Position numbers and translations under genes: made by a program. Below the pieces are notes generated by a model. It did no database searches, was not told the origin of the DNA, and saw nothing but the letters and a program-made list of their open reading frames with translations. From IMG/VR virus record IMGVR_UViG_3300013233_000235, positions 124,001 to 188,000 of that record: a stretch of DNA of 64,000 nt; one strand, 5' to 3'. Shown here one piece after another: positions 487 through 40,467 of the stretch. Numbering within the stretch: position 1 is the first letter of the stretch; every line of letters begins with the position of its first letter.

Positions 487-594
487 GGGCCCCAACTATG
501 GGGGCTTTCTTTTTTATTTGTTTCCATACATTCTCAAGACTATATAACTTGTATGAAGAGACACTTTGATCTCTTATAGTGAAAGGGTTTAATT
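487..594 (+). promoter_or_regulatory. Early cassette, class I: terminator + TATATAACT (541-549) + ATG 553 + hairpin AAGAGA-CACTTTGA-TCTCTT (556-575) + SD
   Basis: Near-identical to nine other intergenic copies. Confidence 0.85.
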
Positions 595-978
595 ATGAAT
601 GAAGAAATCACAGACGTGCTAGTGGCGCTATTAGGCACACTACGTGGCAAGCAACTGGTATTTAAAGCCGCCCCCCCGGACGATTTGCCAGAGACCCACG
701 ACGCGATGGGTGCAAACCCGGCATTCCAATTAACACTTCCCGGAGAGTTGTACGTAGCACTCCACCCAAAACGGTCCCCGGGGTCAGAGGGCTATGACTA
801 CGCGGTGGTATGGGATCGCATATCCGGTGATGATGATTGGCGGCGATGTGGGTCACTGTTGTTAAAAGAGGCCCCTGGGGTGGGAATCATATTTGGTGGC
901 CACTTGCTGATGGACGTGCCCCACAAAGTATCTGGCGATGGCCCGCAGAGACTCACACTTGTGGAGTTATCCCGATGA
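595..978 (+). CDS. hypothetical early protein
   Basis: First ORF after the cassette; ATGA overlap with the next gene. Confidence 0.8.
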   Translation: MNEEITDVLVALLGTLRGKQLVFKAAPPDDLPETHDAMGANPAFQLTLPGELYVALHPKRSPGSEGYDYAVVWDRISGDDDWRRCGSLLLKEAPGVGIIFGGHLLMDVPHKVSGDGPQRLTLVELSR

Positions 979-1574
979 AGGGTGGTACAGGGGATGCCTA
1001 CGAGGGGCGGTGGTTCGAACTCTCGACCCTGCGCCACCTAGTTAAAGCCTTTAAAGATAAAGGTATAACAGTGGCTTCATTGGGCTGGGCTGATACAGAG
1101 GGCAGTCTAAACCCTGATTTCGCATGTATGGCATCACCGATAGAATCCCCATGTGGTAAGATCACCACCGAGTCTCTGGAGTGGATATTGAGCAATACCA
1201 TCACCATGCGGTGCGATCGCGGGTTCGGCTCACAAGCCCATATTTGCACACAGCACGATGGGAAGTCACACATACTCAATTATGAGACGGATGGGCTCCG
1301 TACAGCCCGGCGGATATTTATGGATGACAGCACCGTTCTCGACTGCGCAAGATCTGGGGATGGTAGGCTATGGGTTATAACCCGCCGTGGGTTGTACAAG
1401 TTCTTACCAGATACATTTGGGTGGGGCAATGTGGGCACCCTAGTCGGAGAAGAATTCCCAGTATGTTGGGATATGGTTTCCTCGATGACGCCTACAGAAA
1501 CAGGTGTATCCGTTACGGGTTTCTCGGAGCTCATTGGTTGCGCCGGAGTACGTGTCAGCGCATCTGGCGAATAA
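975..1574 (+). CDS. hypothetical beta-rich protein (paralog family B)
   Basis: Start moved to ATG 975 (ATGA overlap); carries WVITRRGLY motif shared with 28734 and 31850. Confidence 0.7.
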   Translation: MKGGTGDAYEGRWFELSTLRHLVKAFKDKGITVASLGWADTEGSLNPDFACMASPIESPCGKITTESLEWILSNTITMRCDRGFGSQAHICTQHDGKSHILNYETDGLRTARRIFMDDSTVLDCARSGDGRLWVITRRGLYKFLPDTFGWGNVGTLVGEEFPVCWDMVSSMTPTETGVSVTGFSELIGCAGVRVSASGE

Positions 1575-1580
1575 TAAGTT

Positions 1581-1679
1581 AGCCCTTCGGGGCTTTCTTT
1601 TTTATTTGTTTCCATACATTCTTAGAACTATATAACTTGTATGAAGAGACACTTTGATCTCTTGTATAGGAGTTTAGTT
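1581..1679 (+). promoter_or_regulatory. Early cassette, class I (TATATAACT 1629-1637, ATG 1641, loop CACTTTGA)
   Basis: Repeat copy; UUCG-loop terminator, AGGAGT SD. Confidence 0.85.
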
Positions 1680-2486
1680 ATGAGCATACTTGATAAATAC
1701 TTAGGCAAAGCCTTGACGTGCCGCCGATCCACCTTAGTGGAATTCGATGCCAGAGTGCCGTATTACAGAGAATACGCACTGCCTAACGGGCAGGTGGTGT
1801 TTACGCATATTGTCGTAAACAGGGGGCCCAACGAGCTGGGTCACGGGGTTATACTCGGAGGGGCGGGCGGTGATATCATTAAGACGTTAGAAGAAAGTGA
1901 TGACCCTATCATCATGGCGGCTGTCGCCGCACCAACAGAAGGGTTGGATGTCATAATGTTTCGCCGGTATGTGATAGTAACTTTGCCAGGGGCCGTTGCC
2001 GAGCTATCAAAACTATTCTGTGAATACACAGACCCTGATGAGCTCAGTGTGGACCTGACCCCCATGGTAGTGGAATACCACGAGCTGCCACCGGTGTTAG
2101 CTAAGTACCACCCCAACAGTGTGCCAGGTAATACGTTTGAAAGGTACGCACATGGCAACTCATCCGGAGAAGAGCTGTACCTTATTGAAAACCCCGAAAG
2201 CGGTATGCGGGCCTTTGGGGTATACTCACAGGAACAAGGTAAATGGGTGGTGACAGAGGTGGCCCAAACACCTGGTGTGGAAGTCGACCCTATGGCGCAT
2301 GATGAGTGGTTCACCATCGGCCCAATCATGTTTAGACGTGATACACCACTGGGCGTACTAACAGCCACATGGAAAAAGTCTGAACTGGGGGTGTTAATCA
2401 AGCCCAACGGGTATGTGGAGCCAGCCACTGGTGATGATGCGCCAGTTGGCAAGTGCCCCGATGGTAACATGTTGACACGTATGTAA
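1680..2486 (+). CDS. hypothetical early protein
   Basis: SD-led ATG at 1680; the track start 1641 is the cassette ATG. Confidence 0.8.
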   Translation: MSILDKYLGKALTCRRSTLVEFDARVPYYREYALPNGQVVFTHIVVNRGPNELGHGVILGGAGGDIIKTLEESDDPIIMAAVAAPTEGLDVIMFRRYVIVTLPGAVAELSKLFCEYTDPDELSVDLTPMVVEYHELPPVLAKYHPNSVPGNTFERYAHGNSSGEELYLIENPESGMRAFGVYSQEQGKWVVTEVAQTPGVEVDPMAHDEWFTIGPIMFRRDTPLGVLTATWKKSELGVLIKPNGYVEPATGDDAPVGKCPDGNMLTRM

Positions 2487-2492: not shown

Positions 2493-2597
2493 AGCCCCGA
2501 TTAAGGGGCTATCTTTTTTATTTGTTTCACCCATGTGTAAGAACTATATAACTACTATGAAGAGGCACTTTGATCTCTTATGTTGAAGGATGTTGAT
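2493..2597 (+). promoter_or_regulatory. Early cassette, class I (TATATAACT 2545-2553, ATG 2557, stem AAGAGG/TCTCTT with G-U, loop CACTTTGA)
   Basis: Repeat copy. Confidence 0.85.
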
Positions 2598-3107
2598 ATG
2601 ACAATCATTGTAACAACAGTGGATAAAAAGGTGATAACTATGACAGGCGACGGCCGTGGGAGTCTGAGACAGATGGTGGTATCAGACCACTGTGTAAAGG
2701 TGCACCGCCACCATGATAGATTATACGGTTTCGCTGGATCTACGCAGGAGATAGACCAAGCCTTAAAGGTGTTACCATTTATACCGGACGGCGCTGCACC
2801 CGAGACTGTGGAAATGTTTTTGTCGCGGATATTGCAGGATAGCACGTGCATCACGGCAGCCTGGGTCAATGACAAACCCAGACTAGATAGATTCGGGCAT
2901 GGTAAAGCCCACCGCATCACCGACCGCGTGGATTTCTTGGGATCTGGAAGTCGTATGGGTATAGACCTGTTCACACCGACCCGGCTTCTCCACGACTGCA
3001 CTGCGGCAGAGGCGGCTGTAATTACTGTTAACACCGTGGGGCTTATACACAGCTCGTGCGGGGGTAGCACAACCACGGTACGCGTGGCACGGGAGGTTGC
3101 CAAATGA
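2598..3107 (+). CDS. HslV/proteasome-beta-like Ntn peptidase
   Basis: N-terminal M-T-I-I-V, DGR, VKV, FAGS, GSGS and C-terminal SSCGG motifs; GAAGGA SD before ATG 2598. Confidence 0.65.
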   Translation: MTIIVTTVDKKVITMTGDGRGSLRQMVVSDHCVKVHRHHDRLYGFAGSTQEIDQALKVLPFIPDGAAPETVEMFLSRILQDSTCITAAWVNDKPRLDRFGHGKAHRITDRVDFLGSGSRMGIDLFTPTRLLHDCTAAEAAVITVNTVGLIHSSCGGSTTTVRVAREVAK

Positions 3108-3721: not shown

Positions 3722-3854
3722 TAGACCCCCCGATTAAGGGGGTCTATTCTTTTTATGTAAATCTGGAATCAAGCATATCTCAATGACATATAACTAAAAT
3801 GGATATAGGCGTTTTGACTTATATCACTATGGCTTAACAGCCAGGAGTTTTACT
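3722..3854 (+). promoter_or_regulatory. Early cassette, class II: terminator + CATATAACT (3787-3795) + ATG 3799 + hairpin GATATAGG-CGTTTTGA-CTTATATC (3802-3825) + AGGAG SD
   Basis: Near-identical to 40335-40467. Confidence 0.85.
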
Positions 3855-8837: not shown

Positions 8838-8887
8838 ATGTCAGAACTATATAACTACTATGAATACACCTATAGGAGTTTTTTAGG
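8838..8887 (+). promoter_or_regulatory. Early-type promoter without the hairpin (TATATAACT 8848-8856, ATG 8860)
   Basis: 27 nt identical to the 39581 copy, but no CNNNUUGA stem-loop follows. Confidence 0.8.
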
Positions 8888-25771: not shown

Positions 25772-25872
25772 AGCCCCTTCGGGGGCTTTCTTTTTTATTT
25801 GTTTCCATACATTTTCAGAACCATATAACTACTATGAAGAGGCATCTTGATCTCTTACATTGGAGTTTAGTT
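25772..25872 (+). promoter_or_regulatory. Early cassette, class I (CATATAACT 25822-25830, ATG 25834, stem AAGAGG/TCTCTT, loop CATCTTGA)
   Basis: Repeat copy. Confidence 0.85.
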
Positions 25873-27407: not shown

Positions 27408-27790
27408 ATACGCTGGTTAAGCAGGGGCCGTTCACGGTCCCTACCGGTCTATCGGATAGAGCGCTACTGAGGGTAATATCGGCCAATATACCCCACATCC
27501 CCACCATGCACCGTGACCCCGCCGCAGTGGTGGTGGCATTGGCCATGGTGTGGGGAAGCATGTGCACAGAAGATCGACGAGATCTGTATGCCAACTACAG
27601 GACTGGATTGGACATTTACTTATGTCCAGACGAATACGCTGTCAAAATAAATGGGTTGAAATCACCCATAGTCGCAGCCGAATGCGGTATGTGGGTCAGA
27701 TCACTACCAGCGGATGTCCGCAAACGGCTTACCCACATGGTGAGTAAAGCCATATCGAAATACCGGGCGGATACCCCGCCACCAACATAG
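27401..27790 (+). CDS. hypothetical protein
   Basis: Overlap-coupled ORF. Confidence 0.65.
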   Translation: MLNTLVKQGPFTVPTGLSDRALLRVISANIPHIPTMHRDPAAVVVALAMVWGSMCTEDRRDLYANYRTGLDIYLCPDEYAVKINGLKSPIVAAECGMWVRSLPADVRKRLTHMVSKAISKYRADTPPPT

Positions 27791-27798
27791 GGTGCACA

Positions 27799-28584: not shown

Positions 28585-28633
28585 TGGGCACGGGGCTTTC
28601 TTAACCGTAAGCCCCATAGCTGTGTATGTGATG

Positions 28634-28733
28634 GCCCCCTCGGGGGCTTTCTTTTTTATTTGTTTCCATACATTTTCAGAACTATATAACTTGTATGAAG
28701 AGACATCTTGATCTCTTGTATAGGAGTTTAGTT
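28634..28733 (+). promoter_or_regulatory. Early cassette, class I (TATATAACT 28683-28691, ATG 28695, loop CATCTTGA)
   Basis: Repeat copy. Confidence 0.85.
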
Positions 28734-29471: not shown

Positions 29472-29481
29472 GGAGTTAGAC

Positions 29482-29886
29482 ATGAACCGAGTAAGCTTAG
29501 TGAGAGCGCTAAAAGAGTTTTGTAAGTCCACGGGCACCAAGCTATCCGATTACGTGGTAGGTGCAGGTGGTGCCATGATGTTGGAGAGTCGCACTTTGCG
29601 CTCCGAAACCGATGATGTGGATGTTGCTACTTCACACCGGGTGTGGGATCTGTTGTACAAGTTACCACACCGGGAAGAGTATTTCGGGGACACTGAGATA
29701 CGTGCCTTTGGCAAAGTGGATGTACACCTGGTTGATAACCCGGTGGTTATTGAAACACTGGTATCAAAAGAGGGTGTCATATATTGGGACCCTGAGACCG
29801 TGCTACGGTTCAAGCAATACCTCAACAGAGATAAGGATCAGAAGGATATAACCGCCCTAAAGAAGTACATCGCTAGTAATAAGTAA
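29482..29886 (+). CDS. minimal nucleotidyltransferase-fold protein (pol beta superfamily)
   Basis: VVGAGGAM...R.ETDDVDV and later DVH motif; AAGGAG SD. Confidence 0.65.
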   Translation: MNRVSLVRALKEFCKSTGTKLSDYVVGAGGAMMLESRTLRSETDDVDVATSHRVWDLLYKLPHREEYFGDTEIRAFGKVDVHLVDNPVVIETLVSKEGVIYWDPETVLRFKQYLNRDKDQKDITALKKYIASNK

Positions 29887-29892
29887 TAAGTC

Positions 29893-29995
29893 AGCCCCTT
29901 CGGGGGCTTTCCTTTTTATTTGTTTCCATCAATTCTTAGAACTATATAACTTGTATGAAGAGACACTTTGATCTCTTATTGTGAAGGATGTTGAT
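29893..29995 (+). promoter_or_regulatory. Early cassette, class I (TATATAACT 29943-29951, ATG 29955, loop CACTTTGA)
   Basis: Repeat copy; SD segment GAAGGATGTTGATATG identical to the 2557 copy. Confidence 0.85.
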
Positions 29996-30088
29996 ATGAG
30001 TAAAGTATGTAAGAACCCCACAGGCCCAAATGGCCGGGTTAGTTACGGACTCGCCCACGGTACCACCCTCTCCAACGAGCCACACTAG
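29996..30088 (+). CDS. 30-aa micro-protein MSKVCKNPTGPNGRVSYGLAHGTTLSNEPH
   Basis: Occupies the first-gene slot of a cassette with a full SD; manual translation. Confidence 0.55.
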   Translation: MSKVCKNPTGPNGRVSYGLAHGTTLSNEPH

Positions 30089-30101
30089 GGATAAAGGCGC
30101 A

Positions 30102-30731
30102 ATGACCAACCATAGGGTTAGCCCCAACTACACACCCCCAGCAACCCCGCTAGGCGATTATCTGCGTGCCGTCATGGCGCACCAGGATATAACCTGGAGG
30201 GGACTTTCCAATCGCGTGGGATGTACACCCATCTCATTGGCCGCCATCGCATCAGGTGAATCCCGCTTTCCGGATGTATCCCAAGAAAACCTTCTGATGT
30301 ATTGTAAACACGTTTACAAAGATAGGTTTTGTAAGGATGCTTGGCGCAGAGCTATGTCCGGCATACCAACGGGTAATAAGGAGGTGCACGCAGCAATGGC
30401 CACCCCTTTGGGGGACGCTATGCGGGAGTTCCGCCGAGAGCATGGGATCACCTATAGCCAGTTCGCCCGCATGTGTGGTATCAATCACACGTACCTGCGG
30501 TCAATCGAGCGTGGTAAAGTGAAACTTAGCTTTGCCAACGGCGTTTATATATCAAAAGGTATACGCGCCAATGGGGACCTAGATGTGGCAGCGACACGCC
30601 TACTTGATTTGGTGTCTAGCACCATGGTGCAACCCACTTACACGGATATGGCTATTAGAATATCCGCCCTTAATGAAACCAAACAACGCAGGCTTTCTGA
30701 CCTGCTACTTAAGTTGGAGACAGAGAAATGA
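30102..30731 (+). CDS. tandem double XRE-HTH protein
   Basis: Two TPLGD..R...H.IT...L/F.R..G.....L..I.SG/RG repeats. Confidence 0.75.
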   Translation: MTNHRVSPNYTPPATPLGDYLRAVMAHQDITWRGLSNRVGCTPISLAAIASGESRFPDVSQENLLMYCKHVYKDRFCKDAWRRAMSGIPTGNKEVHAAMATPLGDAMREFRREHGITYSQFARMCGINHTYLRSIERGKVKLSFANGVYISKGIRANGDLDVAATRLLDLVSSTMVQPTYTDMAIRISALNETKQRRLSDLLLKLETEK

Positions 30732-30970
30732 ATAATGCCGTAACAAGATACATCAAACAGTTCGTACCAATGCATCCCGAGCGGATTTCCAAGATGGGTA
30801 AGGCCATCGGGTGGGATGGTAATGAGCTATACCACTGGCTGCGTGGTGAACGCCCAAACCCATCCTTGGCGTACATGGAGCGGATCTCCCGTTACCTGAG
30901 CCGGGGTAACCCTGAGTTTGAACCAATCCGGTTCGATCAGCTAATAGAAGGAGTGAACAAACGTGATTGA
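30728..30970 (+). CDS. XRE-HTH protein
   Basis: MGKAIGWDGNELYHWLRGERPNPSLAYMERIS. Confidence 0.75.
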   Translation: MNNAVTRYIKQFVPMHPERISKMGKAIGWDGNELYHWLRGERPNPSLAYMERISRYLSRGNPEFEPIRFDQLIEGVNKRD

Positions 30971-31481
30971 GAAAACAGATGTAAGAAAGCTGTGGCTCAT
31001 GGGTCGCATGGCCGGTATGGTTGACACCATCCGTGGTGAGCGGATGGCTGGTAATATACACATACCCATTGGGGAGCATATGCGGGATGGTGTGTACAAG
31101 CACCAGTTTGTGAACGATAAGCTGGTACGGTCCATTGCGCAGATCCGAGCGGTGATATTGGCGGCCTTAGTCGCCCCACCGGCTGAGTACCTGCCGATAC
31201 TGGCACTGCTGAGCCCCGAAAACCCCGTCCCATATGGTAAAGGTTGGCCTGAAGAGTATGCCCCCGTGCATATGGCGGTGCACGGGTGCTACTTACTAAA
31301 CACCCCCCTGCTATTGACCGAATTGGTGGAGGTGGTTACCTACAGCCTCTTCGACATCCCTGATGAAAACATGGATGTGGCCATTGCCGCGATTCGGTCC
31401 TACTACGCTATGGGGGCCACCGGGGAGTCGCTAGCATTGTACGAGGCATTAGAGGTCTATGACACCATCCCAAAAGGGTAG
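30963..31481 (+). CDS. hypothetical protein
   Basis: GTG start with GGAG SD, overlap-coupled. Confidence 0.65.
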   Translation: MIEKTDVRKLWLMGRMAGMVDTIRGERMAGNIHIPIGEHMRDGVYKHQFVNDKLVRSIAQIRAVILAALVAPPAEYLPILALLSPENPVPYGKGWPEEYAPVHMAVHGCYLLNTPLLLTELVEVVTYSLFDIPDENMDVAIAAIRSYYAMGATGESLALYEALEVYDTIPKG

Positions 31482-31488
31482 ATGCACA

Positions 31489-31728
31489 TTGCCCCCAACC
31501 TCACCATGTGGTGCATGGTTGGATAAGCGTGTACGTGAGGGGGTGATAACTAGGGGCCAGTGGGTGGCTGCACTACCCATCGCGTATGGTACCTGGAGGA
31601 AGATCGAACTGGGTCGTATCCCCATTACCGAGGCGACAGCCATGCGCCTACAGCGGACTGTTATACGTGTGTTGGGTCACGACCACTTAGATAGTTGGTG
31701 GGGTTGTGTTAACACACACCCGCTGTAA
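31489..31728 (+). CDS. XRE-HTH protein (probable TTG start)
   Basis: TRGQWVAALPIAYGTWRKIELGRIPITEATAMRL. Confidence 0.6.
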   Translation: MPPTSPCGAWLDKRVREGVITRGQWVAALPIAYGTWRKIELGRIPITEATAMRLQRTVIRVLGHDHLDSWWGCVNTHPL

Positions 31729-31742
31729 ATTGCGGCATAACA

Positions 31743-31849
31743 AGACTCCCTTAATCGGGAGTCTTTCTTTTTTATTTGTTTCCATACATTCTTAAGACTA
31801 TATAACTTGTATGAAGAGACGCATTGATCTCTTGTATAGGAGTTTAGTT
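31743..31849 (+). promoter_or_regulatory. Early cassette, class I (TATATAACT 31799-31807, ATG 31811, loop CGCATTGA)
   Basis: Repeat copy. Confidence 0.85.
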
Positions 31850-32392
31850 ATGAACGAAGAATTATCTAAAGCGTGTGCATCCATAGCGGATACCCCGCAG
31901 TTGGAATTGACATTTGATGTCAACCGCATTAGCGGTATGCCCGATGGGACAAGTGCCAATATCTTGTCACGATTGTTGGGTGTTCCGCTATCATTCCTAA
32001 CTGCGGTTGCCGGGGTGAGTTGCAAGAAAGCCGCTCTGGCGAATATTTGCACAGCAGTAACACGCCCCGGCCTATCGGTGGTATACGCCGTACGGGGCGG
32101 TACACTGCATGTACAATTCTTGGTTGCTGGGGAGTACGAGCATCTACGGATAGATGCCCCTGAGGATCCCATTCTAGGCATGGGGGTGTCGGGGTTAACC
32201 GCATGGGTGGTTACCACACAGGGTGTCTACAAACACCAGTTGAATGACTTCGAGCCCCCGCAAGTGTTTACATACCCTATAACGGGTATAACGGGCATGG
32301 CGGTAAGTGGTACGGGGATCATCATTGATGTCTTGCTGCCCGACGGTGTTGAGCGATCAATGCATCTGCGTGTGGAGGCCGATAGTGAATAA
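31850..32392 (+). CDS. hypothetical early protein (paralog family B)
   Basis: AWVVTTQGVYK motif. Confidence 0.75.
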   Translation: MNEELSKACASIADTPQLELTFDVNRISGMPDGTSANILSRLLGVPLSFLTAVAGVSCKKAALANICTAVTRPGLSVVYAVRGGTLHVQFLVAGEYEHLRIDAPEDPILGMGVSGLTAWVVTTQGVYKHQLNDFEPPQVFTYPITGITGMAVSGTGIIIDVLLPDGVERSMHLRVEADSE

Positions 32393-33008
32393 GTCCATAT
32401 TAATGGTCTGCGACCCCAAGATCTTTGCTGTGCAGGATCGGTATCTGGTAACCAGACCTGACAGACCCTGTACGTGGAGAACACTGCATCGGCTGGCCCG
32501 CACTTACCCAATCGTTGACAGATACCTAAGTGTTGGGTGCCTGCTGCCAAATCCTGCCCCACACCGCCGTAGCAAGTTCATAGACGAAGGCACCGCCGAA
32601 CTGTACGGCATTATCGCAGACTATGTGGCCAGTGGGTACGCCCACTATAAGTTCGGAGTAGAGGTCGCCAAACACCTGCGCGCCACCACATGTGTGCAGA
32701 GCATGAGTGGTACGCTGAACTGGCTGGCTATCTTACCACACGTCTATCCGGAGTTACGCCCACTTGTGTTAAAGATACATGGCTTGGATGGGTTAGATAG
32801 CGTTATGGTTGCTAAGGCCGTGCGGTTAGCTATAAGCATATCTAAGTACAGGCACCGCCGGACCACCTATTCCGAGGTATACGGAATAACGCCAGCAAAC
32901 GAACGACAGTTGTTCAGCAGAGGATACACCTGCAAACATAAAGAAAAGATTATATCTAACCTAAAAGAGGGGGGCGAGTTATGGGATACATCATCGGTTC
33001 TATGGTAA
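32385..33008 (+). CDS. hypothetical protein (paralog family C, HTH-like C-terminus)
   Basis: GTG start with GGAGG SD; aligns by eye with 33721 and 35144. Confidence 0.7.
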   Translation: MNKSILMVCDPKIFAVQDRYLVTRPDRPCTWRTLHRLARTYPIVDRYLSVGCLLPNPAPHRRSKFIDEGTAELYGIIADYVASGYAHYKFGVEVAKHLRATTCVQSMSGTLNWLAILPHVYPELRPLVLKIHGLDGLDSVMVAKAVRLAISISKYRHRRTTYSEVYGITPANERQLFSRGYTCKHKEKIISNLKEGGELWDTSSVLW

Positions 33009-33721
33009 AGAGGCTACGGGAAGTACAAGGGCTATCTGTAAAGGGCATGGCCCTCTTATACGGGGTTGGTCACCAAAGTCTCCGTAATGCCGAACACGGG
33101 GTTTACTCGCTAACCCCGGATGCTTTCCAAAGTATCGCAATGGCTAGCGAGGAAGTGTATGCTAAAGCGGGGTTTACAAGGGCAGAGATGGCCACTGCCG
33201 CTGCTGACATGTACCTGGCTAGACACCGTGAAGTCATGAAAGACTTCTCATCGAAGAAGGTTGGGCCACGTAAAGAGTATAAGGTGCTGTTACGTAACGC
33301 TCGCCTGAATGGACACATATCGTCAACGCTGCTAGCCCAAGAAATGGGCATAACCCCATACAACTTCGGTCAGTTGGAATGCGCGGGGAGATCTGTTAAG
33401 GGCCCCATGTTACACCGATGGTTATTAGCACTTGAACAATACCAGTGTGAGCGGCCCGTGCTTATAGAGATAGTGGCTGCCAGATATGGGATCTCTATAA
33501 GTATAGCTGGGGAGGTGTTCAACCAGATATACAGTGCTATCCTGGCCAGCGGTATCACCACCCAACGGTACCTTAAAGAAACGGGTACCCGGTCAACTAC
33601 GCTACAGGTGCTGAATGTGCACCGCAGGGTGATGTGGAACATGTGCATGGCCCACAATCGGTGGGTGGACGATAATGGTTTATTAGGCGATAGTTGTAAA
33701 ATAAATATGGAGGAGCTATAA
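32981..33721 (+). CDS. multi-domain XRE-HTH protein
   Basis: VKRLREVQGLSVKGMALLYGVGHQSLRNAEHG and LRNARLNGHISSTLLAQEMGITPYNFGQLE. Confidence 0.75.
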   Translation: MGYIIGSMVKRLREVQGLSVKGMALLYGVGHQSLRNAEHGVYSLTPDAFQSIAMASEEVYAKAGFTRAEMATAAADMYLARHREVMKDFSSKKVGPRKEYKVLLRNARLNGHISSTLLAQEMGITPYNFGQLECAGRSVKGPMLHRWLLALEQYQCERPVLIEIVAARYGISISIAGEVFNQIYSAILASGITTQRYLKETGTRSTTLQVLNVHRRVMWNMCMAHNRWVDDNGLLGDSCKINMEEL

Positions 33722-34389
33722 TGAACATTGGTTTACAACGGGCGCTGGCAGGGTCCATAACGGGTGTGGTCAGCGAGACTGCCCGGCGCGCCATACAGCG
33801 GGACGATGCATCTTGCAGTTGGTACACAATGCGTAGACTGGCCCTACTGCATCCGCAGGTTGGTACAGCACTCAACCTTAACAGGCTGCTACCCACGGTC
33901 ATTCGCAACACCACCTCGCAGACGGTGTGTGATAACACCGGGGAGTTCTACAGCGAGATCAGTACACGGCTTAAGATAACACATGCAGACCACCCTGATC
34001 TGGAGGCGTGTCTGCGCCACCTGGGTACAGACACGCTGAGACCGCACCCTGCCGATGCGATCAACTGGGTAAATATGCGTTACTCACCTGGGCACCTGTG
34101 GACCCTATTTGGCAAGATGTACGGACTAGGCGAGTTATCTACCCACCATCTGAAGCAAGCTGTGTGGCTGGCTGCCGCCCTGGGCACGTACACGGTTCTG
34201 CCCAAAGATTACACGGCAATGTATGGGCTCACCAACCGTGAGGTCAGTTCGGTATTCTCCATTGGGCGAGGGACTAGAGAAAAGTTGGCGGCCCTGGATA
34301 AATGGTCCCAGGTGTCTCCACGGGTCTCAGCCCATGGGGACCTGCCCATATTAACGCACTGGCTGATGTTATTGCAACTACACTCGTAA
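33721..34389 (+). CDS. hypothetical protein (paralog family C)
   Basis: GGAG SD; family motifs. Confidence 0.7.
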   Translation: MNIGLQRALAGSITGVVSETARRAIQRDDASCSWYTMRRLALLHPQVGTALNLNRLLPTVIRNTTSQTVCDNTGEFYSEISTRLKITHADHPDLEACLRHLGTDTLRPHPADAINWVNMRYSPGHLWTLFGKMYGLGELSTHHLKQAVWLAAALGTYTVLPKDYTAMYGLTNREVSSVFSIGRGTREKLAALDKWSQVSPRVSAHGDLPILTHWLMLLQLHS

Positions 34390-34448
34390 CAAACAAATCT
34401 GGGTATACTACCCTAACTAACGCCGCAGATGCGGCAAGGATATTGACT

Positions 34449-35147
34449 ATGGAAAACCAAAGAATAGAAGCAGTTGAAACCAATGCGGCAATTTTAGAGG
34501 TCATGTTAAACTGCGGGTATGACCCCACCTACAGTCACGACATGGCCGCAGGCCGGGTGACATTGGCCGACGCGACATTGGCCCGCATACACGCGGAGGA
34601 CCACCGTATACCCGCCCCCCTCCGCCGTATTGTCGGCGGGATTGACGAGCTGGTAGATCAGGAGCTGAATAGATTGGGGCACACGGCGGTCTCAGTGGAA
34701 GCCAATCTTGGCAAAGGCCTATGCTATTGGGCCGGATGGAAATATAGGTATGTCAAAAGTGGTCAACGTATGTATCACGCACCAGCCCCCGTGGACATGT
34801 TGCTAGAGGCACACAGGATGTCTGGGGAGGCTGTGGATACCGGCTTACTGAAAGCCGTGCTCACAGTGGACGTATACAGCGACCGAGTGCAACGTATGGC
34901 TGTGGCGGCCACGATGTTCCGGACGGCCTACACACTGTCTCATCCAGAGATGGCTGTGGCTGTAGGGTTGGAAAGGCCCGAGCTAGGGCGCTACCTATGT
35001 ATGGGTGGGGATGAGTCGGGTGTACTGTTAGATGCGTCCAAGACGTTTTATCGGTACATGTGGACTCACCGGGTTAAGCTTGGCGAGCTCGTCCCCGACT
35101 GGCTCAACCCTGTTGATTTCAACAGCGCTTATGGTGAATCGATATGA
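34449..35147 (+). CDS. hypothetical protein with C-terminal HTH-like segment
   Basis: AAGGA SD before ATG 34449; FRTAYTLSHPEMAVAVGLERPELGRY. Confidence 0.65.
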   Translation: MENQRIEAVETNAAILEVMLNCGYDPTYSHDMAAGRVTLADATLARIHAEDHRIPAPLRRIVGGIDELVDQELNRLGHTAVSVEANLGKGLCYWAGWKYRYVKSGQRMYHAPAPVDMLLEAHRMSGEAVDTGLLKAVLTVDVYSDRVQRMAVAATMFRTAYTLSHPEMAVAVGLERPELGRYLCMGGDESGVLLDASKTFYRYMWTHRVKLGELVPDWLNPVDFNSAYGESI

Positions 35148-35737
35148 ATGAGTTGCTGACGAAGGTCTTGGGTGACCGCCAGCTAAACTTGACCCCGTCT
35201 GAAGAGAGGGCTATTTATACACCCGGCGTCGGTATGAGCTGGATAAGTCTTGGCAGGATTATCACCAATAACCCCATCCTGATGGGGCAGGGCTATTACG
35301 CCCATCTGTCAGCTGTACACTGCGATCCAAAAACATGCGTGTTAGTGGGTGGGGATGAGATGTCTACGGCTCTGGCTATCTCGATGAAAGAGTTAGCTAC
35401 CTATGGTGATTCCACGTCATTGGATAACCATAAGTACTTCCTATCCAGGGGTGCCAAGCCTACTGGCATCATGGCGAGCTTGTGGATATACCACTTAGAG
35501 CGACATGGCATAACCAGTGCATCAGCGCTGTACAGAGAGGTGTATGGCCTAGATAAGCAACAGGCTAAGGCGGCGTGCGAGCTTGTCTGGGTGACCACCA
35601 TGCGTGGGAGGACGGTCAGCAGGATCGCCAGCTATGCGGGTTACCGCGCCAAAGAGGTTTCCCAACTATGGGTGGTTGGGGCAAAGTCGTCCAAGAAGGA
35701 TGAGGTAATCCACCGTTTACGGGAACTCATGGGGTAG
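35144..35737 (+). CDS. hypothetical protein (paralog family C)
   Basis: ATGA-coupled; family motifs. Confidence 0.7.
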   Translation: MNELLTKVLGDRQLNLTPSEERAIYTPGVGMSWISLGRIITNNPILMGQGYYAHLSAVHCDPKTCVLVGGDEMSTALAISMKELATYGDSTSLDNHKYFLSRGAKPTGIMASLWIYHLERHGITSASALYREVYGLDKQQAKAACELVWVTTMRGRTVSRIASYAGYRAKEVSQLWVVGAKSSKKDEVIHRLRELMG

Positions 35738-35757
35738 TTAACCCCCAGAATAAAGTT

Positions 35758-35856
35758 AGCCCTTCGGGGCTTTCTTTTTTATTTGTTTCCCTATATTCTT
35801 AGAACTATATAACTTGTATGAAGAGACACTTTGATCTCTTGTATAGGAGTTTAGTT
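35758..35856 (+). promoter_or_regulatory. Early cassette, class I (TATATAACT 35806-35814, ATG 35818, loop CACTTTGA)
   Basis: Repeat copy. Confidence 0.85.
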
Positions 35857-36444
35857 ATGAGCGATTTTCTGACACACAGGTGTCACATGTTAAGTACACG
35901 CACCACCACCGGGGGGTCCGAGATGACCACCATCGACGGCCTTGATCTACCACGGGCGGTTAACGTAGGCGGGCATATTGAGTTGAAGAGAGGGGGTGTT
36001 ACATATCGCACTGATAAGCATCCGCCTTGGAAGCCCTTTACAGTGTTGTCAAGCTCGGGACGCCACGCCAACGGGGTATTGTTGGAAATGCACTGCGGGT
36101 GCGATGGCACATACCCGTATGTCCTGTTTATCGATGGTCGGTGCCACGTACTAGGTAAACATTTTGGTGACATCCCAGAGAATGGTTGCGTGTTTGAACA
36201 GGGTCTCTGGATGTACGGCCATGGTCTTCTAGACTACCATGAGTCTGTGGTTATAGCCATCGGTGAGTACACCGGCACCAAACCTAAGCGGCAGCTCAAC
36301 TACAAGGTAATTGCAATGGATACCCCCAAACAAGAGTTCGTAATAGAGATTATACCCAATGCTGAAAATAGCATTGTGTATCAATTGCGGGTAACCCTGC
36401 CAGCGTGGGGTCCCCGCGCACAAGTGATACAACGCGTTAAGTAA
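35857..36444 (+). CDS. hypothetical early protein (paralog family A)
   Basis: SD-led; TIDGLDLP...GGHIEL motif. Confidence 0.75.
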   Translation: MSDFLTHRCHMLSTRTTTGGSEMTTIDGLDLPRAVNVGGHIELKRGGVTYRTDKHPPWKPFTVLSSSGRHANGVLLEMHCGCDGTYPYVLFIDGRCHVLGKHFGDIPENGCVFEQGLWMYGHGLLDYHESVVIAIGEYTGTKPKRQLNYKVIAMDTPKQEFVIEIIPNAENSIVYQLRVTLPAWGPRAQVIQRVK

Positions 36445-36475
36445 TACACACACGGTATATACCAGGAGCTTAATT

Positions 36476-36907
36476 ATGAAAAACGAACAAGCATTAAAAG
36501 ACAAATTGCTGTATGTTAAAGCGGAGTCCGTAAAAACGATCTCCTCCACGTTCGCCAATGGGGATCGTATCAGTCATCTGGAGGTGGACGGCATGCATAT
36601 CCAGGGGCTGGATGGGTCGTCCGACGGGCGGATCGGGTGGAGTGACGGCGTCAACACATGGGTGAGCCAGCCATACCCGCTTTACCATAAAGCGGTCGGT
36701 GGACCCCAACGCTGCGGTGGGGGGCACAACCACATTGGGGTTATACTCCGCGTAAGGGATGGTGGTAGACGTCATCGGCTGTGCCTAGTTTACCGTGGCG
36801 CTGTGTACTACACTGGCGGGCTGGTTAAGAAAACCGGTGATGACATCCTATTCAAGAACCTACTTTGGGTTGGTGGTGTGGGTCCACGGCCAGTGCCCCA
36901 GTCGTGA
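36476..36907 (+). CDS. hypothetical protein (paralog family A)
   Basis: AGGAG SD; VDGMHIQG...GRIGWSDG motif. Confidence 0.75.
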   Translation: MKNEQALKDKLLYVKAESVKTISSTFANGDRISHLEVDGMHIQGLDGSSDGRIGWSDGVNTWVSQPYPLYHKAVGGPQRCGGGHNHIGVILRVRDGGRRHRLCLVYRGAVYYTGGLVKKTGDDILFKNLLWVGGVGPRPVPQS

Positions 36908-37485
36908 GCCAGTCGGAGTGGATGACACCCTACCAATCATTCCTGATAAGTGTCTCCCCCCAACCCCCCGATGGTGACATTATCTGCATTGATGGGCATC
37001 CCCTGCCCAATATAGGGCGTGTCGGCAACGGGTTAACCCTGGACATATCCGGTGAGCCATGGGTGACGGGTCCCCACCCGCCGTACGTGATGCTCAATGG
37101 GGTGCCAGGTGGCATCGCCATCGTATTGGTGTTCCGATGTGATGATCTTGGCACGATGGTCATCGTTGATAAAGGCGGCCCGGTTATAATGGGGAGGTTA
37201 GTCAGGGAGGTCCCCGCGTGTGGTCCAAATGGCACAATTGTTTGTGAGCAGCGTGTGTGGTTACACGGCTTGGGGCACACCGACCTACACGGGCAGCTAA
37301 AGAAAGCCGTTAAATACACCCGGACGTGGGATGCGATCTGCATTAGCACAGCCAACGTCAAGTCTGAGTGGGTTATCACAGCCACCAGGGGTTGGCCCAC
37401 CAATCCCGACGTAGTGGATAACCCATGGGAGCCAACGTATCTGTGCCGTTGGGAAGATGCCCACTGGGCATTTGCACGTATGTAA
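36904..37485 (+). CDS. hypothetical protein (paralog family A)
   Basis: GTGA overlap (alternative ATG 36922); IDGHPLP...GNGLTL motif. Confidence 0.7.
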   Translation: MSQSEWMTPYQSFLISVSPQPPDGDIICIDGHPLPNIGRVGNGLTLDISGEPWVTGPHPPYVMLNGVPGGIAIVLVFRCDDLGTMVIVDKGGPVIMGRLVREVPACGPNGTIVCEQRVWLHGLGHTDLHGQLKKAVKYTRTWDAICISTANVKSEWVITATRGWPTNPDVVDNPWEPTYLCRWEDAHWAFARM

Positions 37486-37491
37486 TTAGTT

Positions 37492-37590
37492 AGCCCTTCG
37501 GGGCTTTCTTTTTTATTTGCTTCCCTATATTCTTAAGCCTATATAACTTGTATGAAGAGACGCATTGATCTCTTGTATAGGAGTTTAGTT
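37492..37590 (+). promoter_or_regulatory. Early cassette, class I (TATATAACT 37540-37548, ATG 37552, loop CGCATTGA)
   Basis: Repeat copy. Confidence 0.85.
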
Positions 37591-39522
37591 ATGAGTGAAA
37601 GATATATCAGAGATCTGAGCCTTAAGTTACAGAGGTGGACAGATGCGTATGCAAGTGGCACCCCACTTGTGTCAGATAGTTTATACGATGCCGTCCATAA
37701 GGAGTTGGACAAAGCGGTCGGCGGATCGGCTGAGAAGTTCGTACCGCAGACCCTGACAGTGGCCACCACTGGTAAGCACCGCGTCCCCATGACCACTCTC
37801 AAAGATGTTTACACGATTGAGGATATTGGCAGATTCGTGAATGGTTTTCCAGAGGGTACCCGCTTTATAGCGGAGCCAAAGATGGATGGGATGGCTATCA
37901 GCCTAACATATGAAAACGGCGATCTGGTCAAAGGGTTAACCCGGGGTGATTATGTTAATGGGGAGCTCTGTACTGAATCCATCAGCTACGTCCCAAGCGT
38001 GCCTATAACACTCGGTCTGGATATCGATATGGAGGTTCGGGGTGAGCTTGTTGTTACCCACGAAAGCTTTACACCAGACATGGGTGTATCGCCACGCAAC
38101 TTTGCCGCAGGCAGCCTTATGAAGGGGGACCAAGAGCGGAACAAGCATCTAACGTTCATCCCATACGCTGTGACAGTGGCGCGCGGTGAATACGGGGAGT
38201 TAACAAGTCTGCACGACAAACTCATGTGGCTGGGGACCATCGGGTTCCAAACCAATCCGGCCAAGATACTGCTGGGCACCCGCGTACAAATCATCGATTG
38301 GATGAAGGATATGCATGAAAGTTGTGACCCGCAGGCACGGCCAGAAGCTTACATGTGCGCGATTGATGGGTTAGTGCTAAAGGTCGATGACTCTGAGCTG
38401 TTTGCCGACGCTGGTGGTACCAGCAAGCACCCCCACGGGGCGATCGCCTTTAAGTACAACTCAGCTAGCGCTGTCACCACGATCGTGGCTGTGGAGGAGT
38501 CTATGGGCCGCTTTGGCGAGATAACTCCAGTGGCTATCGTGGAGCCTGTGACCATCGATGGTAATGTGGTTACCCGTGCCACCCTCCACAACTACGCCAA
38601 GGTTCTAAGCAAGGGTGTATTCATTGGTGGGGAATGCGTACTGATGCGGGCAGGTGGTGTGATACCGGACCTGGTTGCTATGACGGAGAATGTTGACAAG
38701 TTGCCAATCGTATCCCCGCCATCTGTATGCCCAAGCTGTGGTGCCGCAACAATCGTCACCGCCGACCTTATCAACACCACCTGTAGTAGAGAAGACTGGT
38801 CGGAATGTAAGGCGCGTGCGGTGCGTACTGGGGCATACATCGTGTCTAAGAAGGTGCTAAATATACAGGGGCTTGGTGGAAAGACTATCGAGAAGTTGTA
38901 TGACCTTGGTGTCAAGTTAACCACCTTGCACCATGTGCTGACACTTTCCAAGGATGATCTGGTAAAGGCCGCAGGTAACGCTATGGGGAAAAAGGTATAT
39001 GACCGCATCCAGTCGGCGGCTGAGATGTCATGCCAAACATTCATAAAGGCCATGTGCATAAAGGAAATCGGCAACCATGCATCCGTTATATTGTCCGAGC
39101 ATGTGGGTCACCACCCCCAGGGTTTTCTCGACTTATCGGGGGAATCTATCGGGCTTATCAATGGTTTAGCCGAAGATGAAGTTGGGCATTTGGTGGAATT
39201 CTTTGGCGATACCGCGAGGCAAGCGGCGGCATGGCGTGGTCATGATCTGGTGACAGACCCTATGTCGCCTGAAGATGACCCCGCTAATAAAAACGCTGAT
39301 GAGTTGGTAGCTAGGTTCAGCAACGCTGGATTCGATACGTCTCACAAGGTGTGTGTAACCGGATCGTTTGAGGGTTGTAACCGCGATGATATTCACAAGG
39401 CCCTAAGCAACGCTGGGTTCACACCCACGAAATCAGCCAGTGCGAATACCGCCCTAATAGCCGGCGATAAACCGTCGGCATCAAAGGTGGATAAATCGGG
39501 CGCGATGTTCTGTGCGTTTTAA
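37591..39522 (+). CDS. ligA: NAD+-dependent DNA ligase
   Basis: EPKMDG, TRGD...GE, EVRGE, PRNFAAGSL, DGLVLK, AIAFKY, RATLHN, CPSC zinc finger, HhH, C-terminal BRCT (CVTGSF). Confidence 0.95.
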   Translation: MSERYIRDLSLKLQRWTDAYASGTPLVSDSLYDAVHKELDKAVGGSAEKFVPQTLTVATTGKHRVPMTTLKDVYTIEDIGRFVNGFPEGTRFIAEPKMDGMAISLTYENGDLVKGLTRGDYVNGELCTESISYVPSVPITLGLDIDMEVRGELVVTHESFTPDMGVSPRNFAAGSLMKGDQERNKHLTFIPYAVTVARGEYGELTSLHDKLMWLGTIGFQTNPAKILLGTRVQIIDWMKDMHESCDPQARPEAYMCAIDGLVLKVDDSELFADAGGTSKHPHGAIAFKYNSASAVTTIVAVEESMGRFGEITPVAIVEPVTIDGNVVTRATLHNYAKVLSKGVFIGGECVLMRAGGVIPDLVAMTENVDKLPIVSPPSVCPSCGAATIVTADLINTTCSREDWSECKARAVRTGAYIVSKKVLNIQGLGGKTIEKLYDLGVKLTTLHHVLTLSKDDLVKAAGNAMGKKVYDRIQSAAEMSCQTFIKAMCIKEIGNHASVILSEHVGHHPQGFLDLSGESIGLINGLAEDEVGHLVEFFGDTARQAAAWRGHDLVTDPMSPEDDPANKNADELVARFSNAGFDTSHKVCVTGSFEGCNRDDIHKALSNAGFTPTKSASANTALIAGDKPSASKVDKSGAMFCAF

Positions 39523-39538
39523 ATAGCAGTATAAAGTC

Positions 39539-39641
39539 AGCCCCGATTAAGGGGCTTTCTTTTTTATTTGTTTCGCCCATATGTCAGAACTATATAACTA
39601 CTATGAAGAGACACTTTGATCTCTTACTTTGGAGTTTAGTT
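39539..39641 (+). promoter_or_regulatory. Early cassette, class I (TATATAACT 39591-39599, ATG 39603, loop CACTTTGA)
   Basis: Repeat copy. Confidence 0.85.
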
Positions 39642-40325
39642 ATGAGTAAAGTAAACGTAGATGTAACCCCCGCGATGGTAGAAACCTCATTAGCGGTATG
39701 CCTGTCCCGGAATGGTGGTACCAGTGTGCGGGAGTTTGTCGAAAAGACCAGCGCCTACTGGAAAGCCATCTTGACTGAAGAGGCTGGGGAGGTGCTGTGC
39801 GAATTGGGCATAAAGCCCTGGAAACCTCTTAAGAAGGTGAACGCACTGCTGGAATGCGCAGACTTGTATTACACGTTACTGGCTGCCGCACACCAGCCCG
39901 GCTCGGGGGTAGGTAACGTGTACGAATCCGTGGCAGATTGGATGTCGGCACCACCGCGCGATGACATCCCCGAGGGGTTGGTTGACAAAGGCCTCACGCT
40001 GGTACACGTGGCGTCAGATCCGATGAGTACGGTCGCCGACAAGTTGGGGGAGACCGCCATGATAATGGTGGCGATCCTCAAACAGTTGGGGTACTCCCCC
40101 GCCGACATGCTTGGGGCGTTCAAATGGAAGAACGCATTGGTAGAACGACGGTACGAGTTTACACCGACAACTGATGGGAAGGTCGTTATCTACAACAGCG
40201 GGGTGATGTCCGATGATACCGCGCTGGGCCACATCATCCGTGAGCGGGATCTCGCGATGGATCTCCATAAACCATACATGGAGATGTGCGGGGAGATCCG
40301 CAACCGTCTGGCACCTGTAAAATAG
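39642..40325 (+). CDS. MazG-like / dimeric dUTPase-like NTP pyrophosphohydrolase
   Basis: EEAGE...KPWK...LECADLYY motif. Confidence 0.7.
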   Translation: MSKVNVDVTPAMVETSLAVCLSRNGGTSVREFVEKTSAYWKAILTEEAGEVLCELGIKPWKPLKKVNALLECADLYYTLLAAAHQPGSGVGNVYESVADWMSAPPRDDIPEGLVDKGLTLVHVASDPMSTVADKLGETAMIMVAILKQLGYSPADMLGAFKWKNALVERRYEFTPTTDGKVVIYNSGVMSDDTALGHIIRERDLAMDLHKPYMEMCGEIRNRLAPVK

Positions 40326-40334
40326 CAGCATAAG

Positions 40335-40467
40335 TAGACCCCCTATTAAGGGGTCTATTCTTTTTATGTAAATCTGGAATCAACGTATTTTCAATGACAT
40401 ATAACTAAAATGGATATAGGCGTTTTGACTTATATCTATTAATGGCTTAACAGCCAGGAGTTTTACT
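40335..40467 (+). promoter_or_regulatory. Early cassette, class II (CATATAACT 40398-40406, ATG 40410, hairpin GATATAGG-CGTTTTGA-CTTATATC 40413-40436)
   Basis: Near-identical to 3722-3854. Confidence 0.85.

What the first reader, a model, noticed from the sequence alone, without database searches (positions are those of the whole stretch)
553..40436. Regulon-wide 5' stem-loop with an invariant CNNNUUGA loop and a fully exchanged stem on 12 early leaders
Seen: directly after (T/C)ATATAACT-N3-ATG, ten class I copies (ATG at 553, 1641, 2557, 25834, 28695, 29955, 31811, 35818, 37552, 39603) read AAGAG(A/G)-[8 nt]-TCTCTT. Two class II copies (3799, 40410) read GATATAGG-[8 nt]-CTTATATC. The stems share no sequence, yet every loop fits C-N-N-N-U-U-G-A (CACUUUGA x6, CAUCUUGA x2, CGCAUUGA x2, CGUUUUGA x2). 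Stem variants are G-U wobbles, and the loop falls in a different reading frame in class II, so the constraint looks like RNA structure rather than peptide or dsDNA operator. The hairpin lies just upstream of the SD. Inference: it is a protein-binding tag on early mRNAs, either a coordinated translational switch, a 5'-end stabiliser, or an export/priority signal. The last fits phiKZ-like phages, which transcribe DNA inside an early vesicle and later a nucleus and translate outside it. I am not aware of such an element being described for these phages.
Basis: partly seen in the sequence, partly recalled or inferred. Interest (0 to 1): 0.92.

Follow-up and report, generated by a model that had tools for sequence, protein, structure and literature searches.

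The report
Shared 5' hairpin on early phage mRNAs
An uncultivated phiKZ-like giant phage puts the same small RNA hairpin, predicted to start one base after the transcription start, on 26 of its 30 known early-type promoters; it is real and specific to this phage, but what it does (most likely 5'-end protection plus a protein docking site) is untested.

Summary
There are 10 class I (AAGAGR-N8-TCTCTT) and 2 class II (GATATAGG-N8-CTTATATC) inverted repeats, all on the + strand and all directly after (T/C)ATATAACT-N3-ATG. Chance expectation is below 0.1.

The window is bases 124001-188000 of IMG/VR contig 3300013233_000235. This is a distant phiKZ-like phage with a phiKZ-type capsid protein, a PHIKZ123-like RNA polymerase subunit and a PhuZ homolog. 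In the parts of the contig I could fetch, 26 of 30 such promoters carry the hairpin.

By homology with phiKZ and AR9 early promoters (consensus-N6-G+1), the invariant "ATG" is the start-site motif, not a codon. The stem then begins at +2 in both classes. The distance to the 5' end is therefore fixed, while the distance to the Shine-Dalgarno sequence is not.

- The stems are not fully exchanged; only 2-3 pairs are compensatory.
- The class I hairpin is weak, about -5 kcal/mol.
- The element sits inside a repeated terminator-promoter-leader cassette, so the copies are not independent.

It is absent from the three distant relatives, the two reference-phage segments and the metagenome collection that I searched.

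Best reading: a lineage-specific 5'-terminal RNA stem-loop that protects or marks early mRNAs. An export role is not excluded but is unlikely to be general.

The parts
556..575 (+). class I hairpin (AAGAGA-CACTTTGA-TCTCTT), predicted +2..+21 of transcript starting at G555
1644..1663 (+). class I hairpin, loop CACTTTGA; TSS G1643
2560..2579 (+). class I hairpin with G-U closing pair (AAGAGG), loop CACTTTGA; TSS G2559
3802..3825 (+). class II hairpin (GATATAGG-CGTTTTGA-CTTATATC); TSS G3801
3831..3842 (+). second small hairpin of class II leader (GGCTTAACAGCC) abutting the SD AGGAG
   Evidence: family D18
25837..25856 (+). class I hairpin (AAGAGG), loop CATCTTGA; TSS G25836
28698..28717 (+). class I hairpin, loop CATCTTGA; TSS G28697
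29958..29977 (+). class I hairpin, loop CACTTTGA; TSS G29957
31814..31833 (+). class I hairpin, loop CGCATTGA; TSS G31813
35821..35840 (+). class I hairpin, loop CACTTTGA; TSS G35820
37555..37574 (+). class I hairpin, loop CGCATTGA; leader of NAD-dependent DNA ligase gene (37591-39522)
39606..39625 (+). class I hairpin, loop CACTTTGA; TSS G39605
40413..40436 (+). class II hairpin; TSS G40412
40444..40455 (+). second small hairpin of class II leader (GGCTTAACAGCC)
1576..1685 (+). representative full class I cassette: intrinsic terminator, T-rich tract, TATATAACT-N3-ATG promoter, hairpin, SD GGAG, start codon. 11 copies in the window at 65-100% identity
   Evidence: (family D2)
8848..8862 (+). 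same promoter type without the hairpin; feeds the 8888-10228 gene and the PHIKZ123-like nvRNAP subunit gene 10292-11899
40864..40878 (+). same promoter type without the hairpin (unstructured 58-nt leader)

Best explanation
The element is a stem-loop at the very 5' end of early mRNAs of an uncultivated phiKZ-like jumbo phage.

Anatomy. The promoter (T/C)ATATAAC-N6-G is the counterpart of the phiKZ and AR9 virion-RNA-polymerase early promoter. The G of the invariant 'ATG' is the predicted +1. The transcript then starts pppG followed directly by the stem: 6 bp in class I, 8 bp in class II. Inside the nominal 8-nt loop, C1 can pair with G7 and R2 with U6. That leaves a Y-N-U triloop and a bulged A8.

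Mechanism (inferred). With only one unpaired 5' nucleotide, the hairpin should deny RppH and the RNase E 5' sensor the single-stranded end they need, so it should stabilise early mRNAs. The invariant C, UUG and bulged A, kept across two different stems, look like a sequence-specific contact for a trans-acting factor, most likely a phage or host protein, that reads or reinforces this 5' mark.

Shown versus inferred. Shown: the sequences, their positions, their pairing potential and their restriction to this promoter type. Inferred: the transcription start site, folding in vivo, the stabilising effect and the existence of a binding partner.
For: 1. Promoter identity. phiKZ early promoters read TATATTAC-N6-G. 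AR9, phiKZ and phiR1-37 start 6 nt downstream of the consensus, at G in AR9 (PMC5312081). The phiKZ late motif is T-3 A-2 T-1 G+1 (PMC7598289). One such promoter here feeds a PHIKZ123 homolog, and sigma-70-like promoters are depleted.
2. The stem starts at predicted +2 in both classes despite different stem lengths, whereas the distance to the SD differs (5-6 nt versus 18 nt).
3. Across 21 class I copies the only variable hairpin positions are loop positions 2-4 and one A/G opposite U. Flanking spacers vary freely.
4. Classes I and II differ almost everywhere except the promoter core, the ATG, the loop C...UUGA and the SD.
5. 99.3% of cells are paired, 2 pairs are compensatory and 2 vary only by wobble. 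Only 2 of 500 shuffles reach the observed pairing or covariation score.
6. The hairpin has P>=0.9 in the ensemble for 10 of 12 leaders.
7. Hairpins with this loop occur only at these promoters and only on the sense strand.
8. RppH and RNase E need single-stranded 5' ends, and 5' structures stabilise mRNA (review PMC3997798).
Against: - The transcription start site is inferred by homology, not mapped.
- The class I hairpin is weak (about -5 kcal/mol) and no more stable than shuffled sequence (z about 0).
- All copies are paralogs within one genome and lie in a repeated cassette, so conservation could partly be concerted evolution.
- Covariation rests on a single class I / class II split. 61 of 500 shuffles give as many doubly changed pairs.
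- The stems are invariant in sequence within class I, which is more than pairing alone requires.
- Four promoters, including those for core genes, lack the element.
- Distant relatives and phiKZ lack it, so there is no cross-species support.
- No candidate binding protein was identified.
Confidence: 0.45

Rival explanations
1. Passenger of a proliferating regulatory cassette. The hairpin is simply part of a PeSL-like terminator-promoter-SD module. That module has spread and been homogenised by recombination in front of ORFan early genes. Its ubiquity would then reflect cassette copying, not selection on each leader.
For: - An 11-copy, 110-nt repeat family runs from the preceding stop codon to the first codons of the next gene.
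- The downstream proteins are mostly unrelated ORFans that share only their first codons, MNEE or MSK.
- The four promoters without the hairpin include those that feed conserved core genes, the nvRNAP subunit and PhuZ.
- PeSL cassettes of T4-like phages behave this way (PMC4122927).
Against: - Variation inside the cassette is not uniform. Stems and five loop positions are invariant, while adjacent spacers and loop positions 2-4 vary.
- Two class I copies lack the upstream terminator part yet keep the hairpin (contig 44799 and 94992).
- Class II shares the loop within an otherwise different cassette.
Confidence: 0.15
2. DNA-level element. The inverted repeat at +2..+21 would be a downstream promoter element or an operator. 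It would be bound as duplex DNA by the phage RNA polymerase or by a repressor that shuts off early transcription.
For: - It is a perfect palindrome with arms of invariant sequence within class I, which is more than pairing needs.
- Its position overlaps the initially transcribed region.
- For phiKZ nvRNAP, the region downstream of the start site is reported to matter, with no motif known (PMC7598289).
- The RNA hairpin itself is thermodynamically weak.
Against: - The conserved centre is asymmetric and keeps its register with the stem, not with the start site: TTGA lies at +12..+15 in class I and +14..+17 in class II.
- Departures from symmetry are G-T only on the sense strand (3 class I copies and all class II copies).
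- The two classes would need two different dimeric binders that share a non-palindromic centre.
- The arms are separated by 8 bp.
Confidence: 0.12
3. Translational control element. The hairpin would be an operator for a translational repressor or activator. Or its 5' arm would act as an anti-anti-SD that stops the pyrimidine-rich 3' arm (UCUCUU) from pairing with the SD.
For: - In class I leaders with the GUAUAGGAG spacer, removing the 5' arm in silico lowers SD accessibility, for example 0.60 to 0.09 and 0.27 to 0.02.
- In one fold of copy 25836, the MFE pairs UCUC with GGAG.
- The hairpin lies 5-6 nt from the SD in class I.
Against: - The effect is small in the other class I spacer types tested and absent in class II.
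- Spacing from hairpin to SD is not conserved between the classes.
- The loop conservation is not explained.
Confidence: 0.12
4. Leader peptide or N-terminal tag. Transcription would start at the A of ATG, giving a leaderless AUG. Class I would then encode M-K-R-(H/R)-(F/L/I/V)-D-L-L.
For: - In this frame the A/G stem variant is synonymous (AGA/AGG).
- CAC/CAT is also synonymous.
- NTT always gives a hydrophobic residue.
- 13 of 21 copies read through in frame into the gene.
Against: - 8 of 21 copies hit a stop after 8-9 codons.
- The third positions of GAT and CTC never vary.
- The class II loop is in another frame and encodes an unrelated peptide.
- By homology the start is the G, so the AUG would not be in the RNA.
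Confidence: 0.05

Closest known systems
phiKZ/AR9-type virion-RNA-polymerase early promoters (TATATTAC-N6-G+1; AAATATATATTAT-N6-G+1)
   Same: - An AT-rich octamer centred near -10.
- A G start 6 nt downstream.
- A T-rich tract further upstream.
- Location in front of early operons, including an nvRNAP subunit gene.
- 5' UTRs of 37-56 nt, against a typical 31-40 nt in phiKZ.
   Different: - The core here is TATATAAC(T), with an invariant ATG at the start site.
- phiKZ leaders (8 inspected) and Vibrio phage Yong leaders share no hairpin.
5'-terminal stabilising stem-loops (E. coli ompA and papA leaders; T7 gene 10 leader)
   Same: A hairpin beginning within 1-2 nt of the predicted 5' end. This is the geometry known to block RppH and 5'-end-dependent RNase E (PMC3997798). 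The T7 example is from my own knowledge.
   Different: - Those stabilisers need structure only. Here five loop or bulge nucleotides are conserved across two stems.
- The stem is short and weak.
- The stabilising effect has not been tested.
PeSL (promoter-early stem-loop) cassettes of T4-like phages
   Same: A composite of terminator stem-loop, early promoter, SD and start codon. It is repeated many times in front of ORFan early genes (PMC4122927).
   Different: - PeSLs use sigma-70-like promoters, and their stem-loop lies upstream of the promoter.
- The hairpin studied here lies downstream of the start site and is additional.
- A role in gene shuffling cannot be tested without close relatives.
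Lambda boxB/nut hairpins and coat-protein operators (MS2, Qbeta, PP7)
   Same: A small hairpin on phage transcripts whose loop and bulged-A identity is conserved while stem sequence can change. This is the classical signature of a protein-binding RNA (my own knowledge).
   Different: - There is no boxA and no GNRA-like pentaloop.
- The position is at the very 5' end, not internal or at a start codon.
- No N-like or coat-like partner has been identified.
- Antitermination is implausible because each unit has its own promoter and strong terminator.

Membership tests
phiKZ-type vRNAP early promoter | About 8-10 nt AT-rich conserved element centred near -10, over-represented upstream of early operons | tested here: met
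   14 copies of (T/C)ATATAACT-N3-ATG against 0.46 expected. All are intergenic, on the + strand and upstream of genes. phiKZ shows TATATTAC.
phiKZ-type vRNAP early promoter | Transcription start 6 nt downstream of the element (G) | not testable with these tools
   The position holds an invariant G in all 30 promoters, and phiKZ shows the same layout. No RNA data are available.
phiKZ-type vRNAP early promoter | The phage encodes phiKZ-type multisubunit RNA polymerase | tested here: met
   10292-11899 matches PHIKZ123 (7ogp_E) at E=1e-50. Also present: PhiKZ_MCP Pfam, a PhuZ homolog, TerL and sheath.
5'-terminal stabilising stem-loop | Base-paired structure beginning within about 1-2 nt of the 5' end | tested here: inconclusive
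   Met only if the start is the predicted G, in which case the stem begins at +2 in both classes. The start site is not mapped.
5'-terminal stabilising stem-loop | Prolongs mRNA half-life in an RppH/RNase E-dependent way | not testable with these tools
   Needs half-life measurements.
PeSL cassette | Terminator stem-loop immediately upstream of an early promoter, followed by SD and start codon, repeated in ORFan regions | tested here: met
   ORFan downstream genes.
PeSL cassette | Sigma-70-like early promoter | tested here: not met
   The promoter is of the phiKZ vRNAP type. Sigma-70-like sites are depleted, 12 against 20 expected.
PeSL cassette | Cassettes coincide with indel or replacement boundaries between close relatives | not testable with these tools
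   No close relative exists in the viral, metagenome or protein collections.
Lambda nut (boxA + boxB) | BoxA sequence plus a hairpin with a GNRA-like pentaloop, acting with an N-type antiterminator | tested here: not met
   The loop is C-R-Y-N-U-U-G-A. There is no boxA shared by both classes.
Any Rfam family | Covariance-model match at the gathering score | tested here: not met
   No match in the 64-kb window.

The most novel reading that the evidence does not exclude
The hairpin is a cis-acting identity tag on transcripts made by the injected virion RNA polymerase. A virion-delivered or very early phage protein would read it. That protein would then route these mRNAs out of the early infection vesicle, give them priority on ribosomes, or spare them from a phage-induced host mRNA shut-off. 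This would be the first cis signal for mRNA trafficking or self-marking in a nucleus-forming phage lineage. A 2025 review still lists how mRNA leaves the vesicle as an open question (PMC12908238).
Probability: 0.1. Interest if true: 0.8.

Novelty: new variant of a known kind. Interest (0 to 1): 0.45.

Why it matters
Early gene expression of phiKZ-like phages runs on an injected polymerase and is separated from translation. Apart from the promoter, little cis-acting information on early mRNAs has been described.

A near-universal 5' hairpin with a sequence-specific loop suggests that, at least in this lineage, early mRNAs carry a post-transcriptional mark. If that holds, it offers a handle to find the factor that reads it, and a compact 5' module for stabilising or tagging synthetic transcripts.

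Its value is limited for three reasons:
- The phage is uncultivated and its host is unknown.
- No close relatives are available.
- Model chimalliviruses do not share the element.

Tried and rejected
1. Close relatives for covariation: none found.
   - Megablast against 50,697 phage records gave no hit.
   - The capsid protein finds only self in IMG/VR and one 34%-identical cluster among 5.8 billion proteins.
   - A profile search adds one 32% relative.
   - A metagenome scan for the class I hairpin gave 14 chance hits and no promoter context.
   - The 106 non-home IMG/VR hits to promoter plus loop have no stems.
2. A covariance model of the hairpin finds exactly the 26 known copies. It finds nothing in relatives L119, L120 and L122, in phiKZ 1-50 kb or in Vibrio phage Yong 1-50 kb.
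3. The anti-anti-SD switch works only for one class I spacer type and not for class II, so I rejected it as the general mechanism.
4. The peptide or leaderless-uORF reading was rejected for the reasons given under rivals.
5. These matches were checked by eye from the sequence, and none is shared by both classes:
   - a host sigma-70 -35 (TTGACT / TTGATC) with no -10 at 16-18 bp;
   - an IHF site on the opposite strand;
   - a Dam GATC, which is class I only;
   - 16S complementarity of UGAUC, which is class I only.
6. An RNase E motif (RN|WUU) fits most loops, but it does not explain C1, G7 or A8. I noted it and did not adopt it.
7. Supplementary TSS tables for phiKZ were not held in the library.
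8. Pfam and PHROGs scans of the downstream genes gave almost nothing, so no RNA-binding candidate emerged.
Full report
**Observation.** The pattern (T/C)ATATAACT-N3-ATG occurs 14 times in the window, all on the + strand, against 0.46 expected. Ten of these are followed at once by AAGAG(A/G)-N8-TCTCTT (0.07 expected). Two are followed by GATATAGG-N8-CTTATATC (0.02 expected). A scan for any stem of at least 5 pairs closing a C...TTGA loop returns only these 12 on the + strand, plus one 5-bp chance hit on the - strand. The promoters at 8848 and 40864 are of the same type but have no such hairpin.

**What the window is.**
- It is bases 124001-188000 of the 204-kb contig IMGVR_UViG_3300013233_000235.
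- It has no near match among 50,697 phage records.
- Its 720-aa capsid protein carries the PhiKZ_MCP family but is only about 27% identical to the best isolates.
- The 535-aa product of 10292-11899 matches PHIKZ123, a subunit of the phiKZ non-virion RNA polymerase, at E=1e-50.
- Elsewhere on the contig there are PhuZ, terminase and sheath homologs.
- Sigma-70-like promoters are depleted.
- This is therefore a deep-branching phiKZ-like phage. A chimallin gene was not in the roughly 55% of the contig I could fetch.

**Promoter and start site.**
- phiKZ early promoters in its first 50 kb read TATATTAC-N6-G.
- The AR9 study gives AAATATATATTAT-N6-G+1. It also states that the phiKZ and phiR1-37 virion-polymerase promoters start 6 nt downstream of the consensus (PMC5312081).
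- The phiKZ late motif is T-3 A-2 T-1 G+1 (PMC7598289).
- Here TATATAAC-(T-N3-A-T)-G puts the G of the invariant "ATG" at +1.
- The ATG is also invariant in the four hairpin-less promoters. It therefore belongs to the promoter, not to the hairpin or to a coding sequence.
- This start site is inferred, not measured.
- With it, leaders are 37-40 nt in class I and 54-56 nt in class II, close to the 31-40 nt typical of phiKZ (PMC8244752).

**Anatomy.**
- On that start site the stem begins at +2 in both classes, although the stems are 6 and 8 bp long.
- The distance from the hairpin to the SD is 5-6 nt in class I. In class II it is 18 nt, with a second small hairpin in between.
- The element therefore keeps register with the 5' end, not with the ribosome-binding site. 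The TTGA keeps register with the stem, not with the start site (+12..+15 versus +14..+17).
- RNAalifold extends the helix into the nominal loop. C1 pairs with G7 and R2 with U6 (A-U or G-U), which leaves a Y-N-U triloop and a bulged A8.

**Census.**
- The fetched parts of the contig hold 21 class I and 5 class II copies. New loops are CACATTGA, CGCTTTGA and CACGTTGA, so the loop consensus is C-R-Y-N-U-U-G-A.
- The class II-type promoter string occurs six times in all of IMG/VR, all on this contig. Five of the six carry the class II hairpin.
- The GAAC-type promoter occurs 16 times on the contig, and 14 of these carry class I.
- Of 30 known promoters, 26 carry the element.
- The four without it include those that feed the PHIKZ123-like operon and the PhuZ homolog. 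Two of the four have other 5'-proximal hairpins.

**Evidence for an RNA structure.**
- Among the 21 class I copies, the only variable hairpin positions are loop positions 2-4 and one A/G opposite U. The N3 spacer, the -25..-10 region and the hairpin-to-SD spacer vary freely.
- Classes I and II differ nearly everywhere except the promoter core, the ATG, C...UUGA and the SD.
- On a model-guided alignment of the 26 copies, 99.3% of cells pair. Two pairs change on both sides, two vary only by wobble and three never vary.
- Only 2 of 500 shuffles reach the observed pairing or covariation score. However, 61 of 500 reach the number of doubly changed pairs.
- The covariation is therefore modest and comes from one class I / class II split. 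"Fully exchanged stem" is an overstatement.
- Class I is thermodynamically weak, about -5 kcal/mol with z near 0. The hairpin still has P>=0.9 in the ensemble for 10 of 12 leaders.
- The class II leader is clearly structured (-14 kcal/mol, z=-2.5).

**Context.**
- Each copy sits in a repeated module of intrinsic terminator, T-tract, promoter, hairpin, SD and first codons. The 110-nt family has 11 copies, and terminators are confirmed.
- The genes downstream are mostly unrelated ORFans.
- This resembles the PeSL cassettes of T4-like phages (PMC4122927). It means the copies are not independent observations.
- Two class I copies lack the terminator part yet keep the hairpin. This argues the hairpin is not merely carried along.

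**Relatives.**
- Three distant relatives (L119 and L120 at 34% capsid identity; L122 at 32%), Vibrio phage Yong and phiKZ all share the promoter core.
- None has the hairpin, whether inspected by eye or searched with the covariance model.
- Some of their leaders have other 5'-proximal hairpins, but not consistently.
- A metagenome scan found no close relative.
- The element is therefore lineage-specific as far as public data show.

**Mechanism.**
- The fixed register with the predicted 5' end points to a function tied to that end.
- RppH and the RNase E 5' sensor need single-stranded 5' termini, and 5' structures stabilise mRNA (PMC3997798). One unpaired nucleotide would block both.
- The conserved C, UUG and bulged A across two stems suggest a sequence-specific partner.
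- I commit to a 5'-terminal protective stem-loop that also serves as a protein contact, at confidence 0.45.
- The rivals are listed with their tests: passenger of the cassette, duplex-DNA operator or downstream promoter element, translational operator or anti-anti-SD, and leaderless leader peptide.
- The anti-anti-SD effect appears only in one class I spacer type and not in class II.
- The peptide reading explains the synonymous A/G and C/T variants. It fails on the invariant third positions, the stops in 8 of 21 copies, the different frame in class II and the predicted start.

- Export from the early vesicle remains an open question in the field (PMC12908238), and my data do not exclude it.
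- The absence of the element from phiKZ and other relatives means it cannot be the general solution.
- Verdict: a real, new, lineage-specific variant of a known kind of element, with untested function.

Noticed in passing
window 541-555 and the other 13 promoters: Class I and most other promoters have T-A-T-G at the predicted start, identical to the phiKZ late (nvRNAP) T-3ATG+1 motif. Class II and III promoters have A-A-T-G. Class I units might therefore be read by both phage polymerases, and class II only by the virion enzyme.
   Followed up: partly
L013:11643-11720 (contig about 44019) and L010:5245-5300 (contig about 62741): Two promoters of the same type carry different 5'-proximal hairpins. 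One is a 9-bp stem with loop UAAUUCUG (-11.9 kcal/mol, z=-4.9). The other is GAUGGGU-AACA-ACCCUUC in front of the PhuZ homolog.
   Followed up: partly
window 56992-59598 (- strand), repeats at 57131-58017: The 868-aa protein gene contains a degenerate 60-nt (20-residue) periodic repeat array, with at least 10 units at 61-88% identity.
   Followed up: no
window 20154-20279: Three tandem 42-nt repeats, two of them identical, lie at the 3' end of the 813-aa virion structural protein gene (17847-20288).
   Followed up: no
window 49260-55042 (- strand): Three adjacent proteins of about 550-570 aa all carry FG-GAP repeats (Pfam PF14312). They are probably virion or host-recognition proteins.
   Followed up: no
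window start codons after each cassette (e.g. 595, 28734, 31850, 39642): Unrelated early proteins begin with the same few codons (ATGAACGAAGAA = MNEE; ATGAGTAAAG = MSK). Cassette similarity, or selection on the initiation region, therefore runs 6-12 nt into the coding sequence.
   Followed up: partly
L119:62-150 and L119:6125-6200 (Logan SRR12358676, 34% capsid identity): In this AT-rich distant relative, two TATATAAC promoters are followed by leaders that share a different hairpin (CCCUAGCUAUUAGGG / CCUCUAGCUAUAGGGG). This hints that each lineage may have its own leader hairpin.
   Followed up: no
window 25000-41500: Terminators upstream of the promoters are near-identical (AGCCCCTTCGGGGGCT plus TTCTTTTTT, with a UUCG tetraloop). 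Even the 20 nt before them (AATAGCAGTATAAAGTCAGCCCC) recur.
   Followed up: partly
window 2598-3107: An early gene product has weak similarity to an HslV-family peptidase (PHROG 1040, E=2e-7).
   Followed up: no
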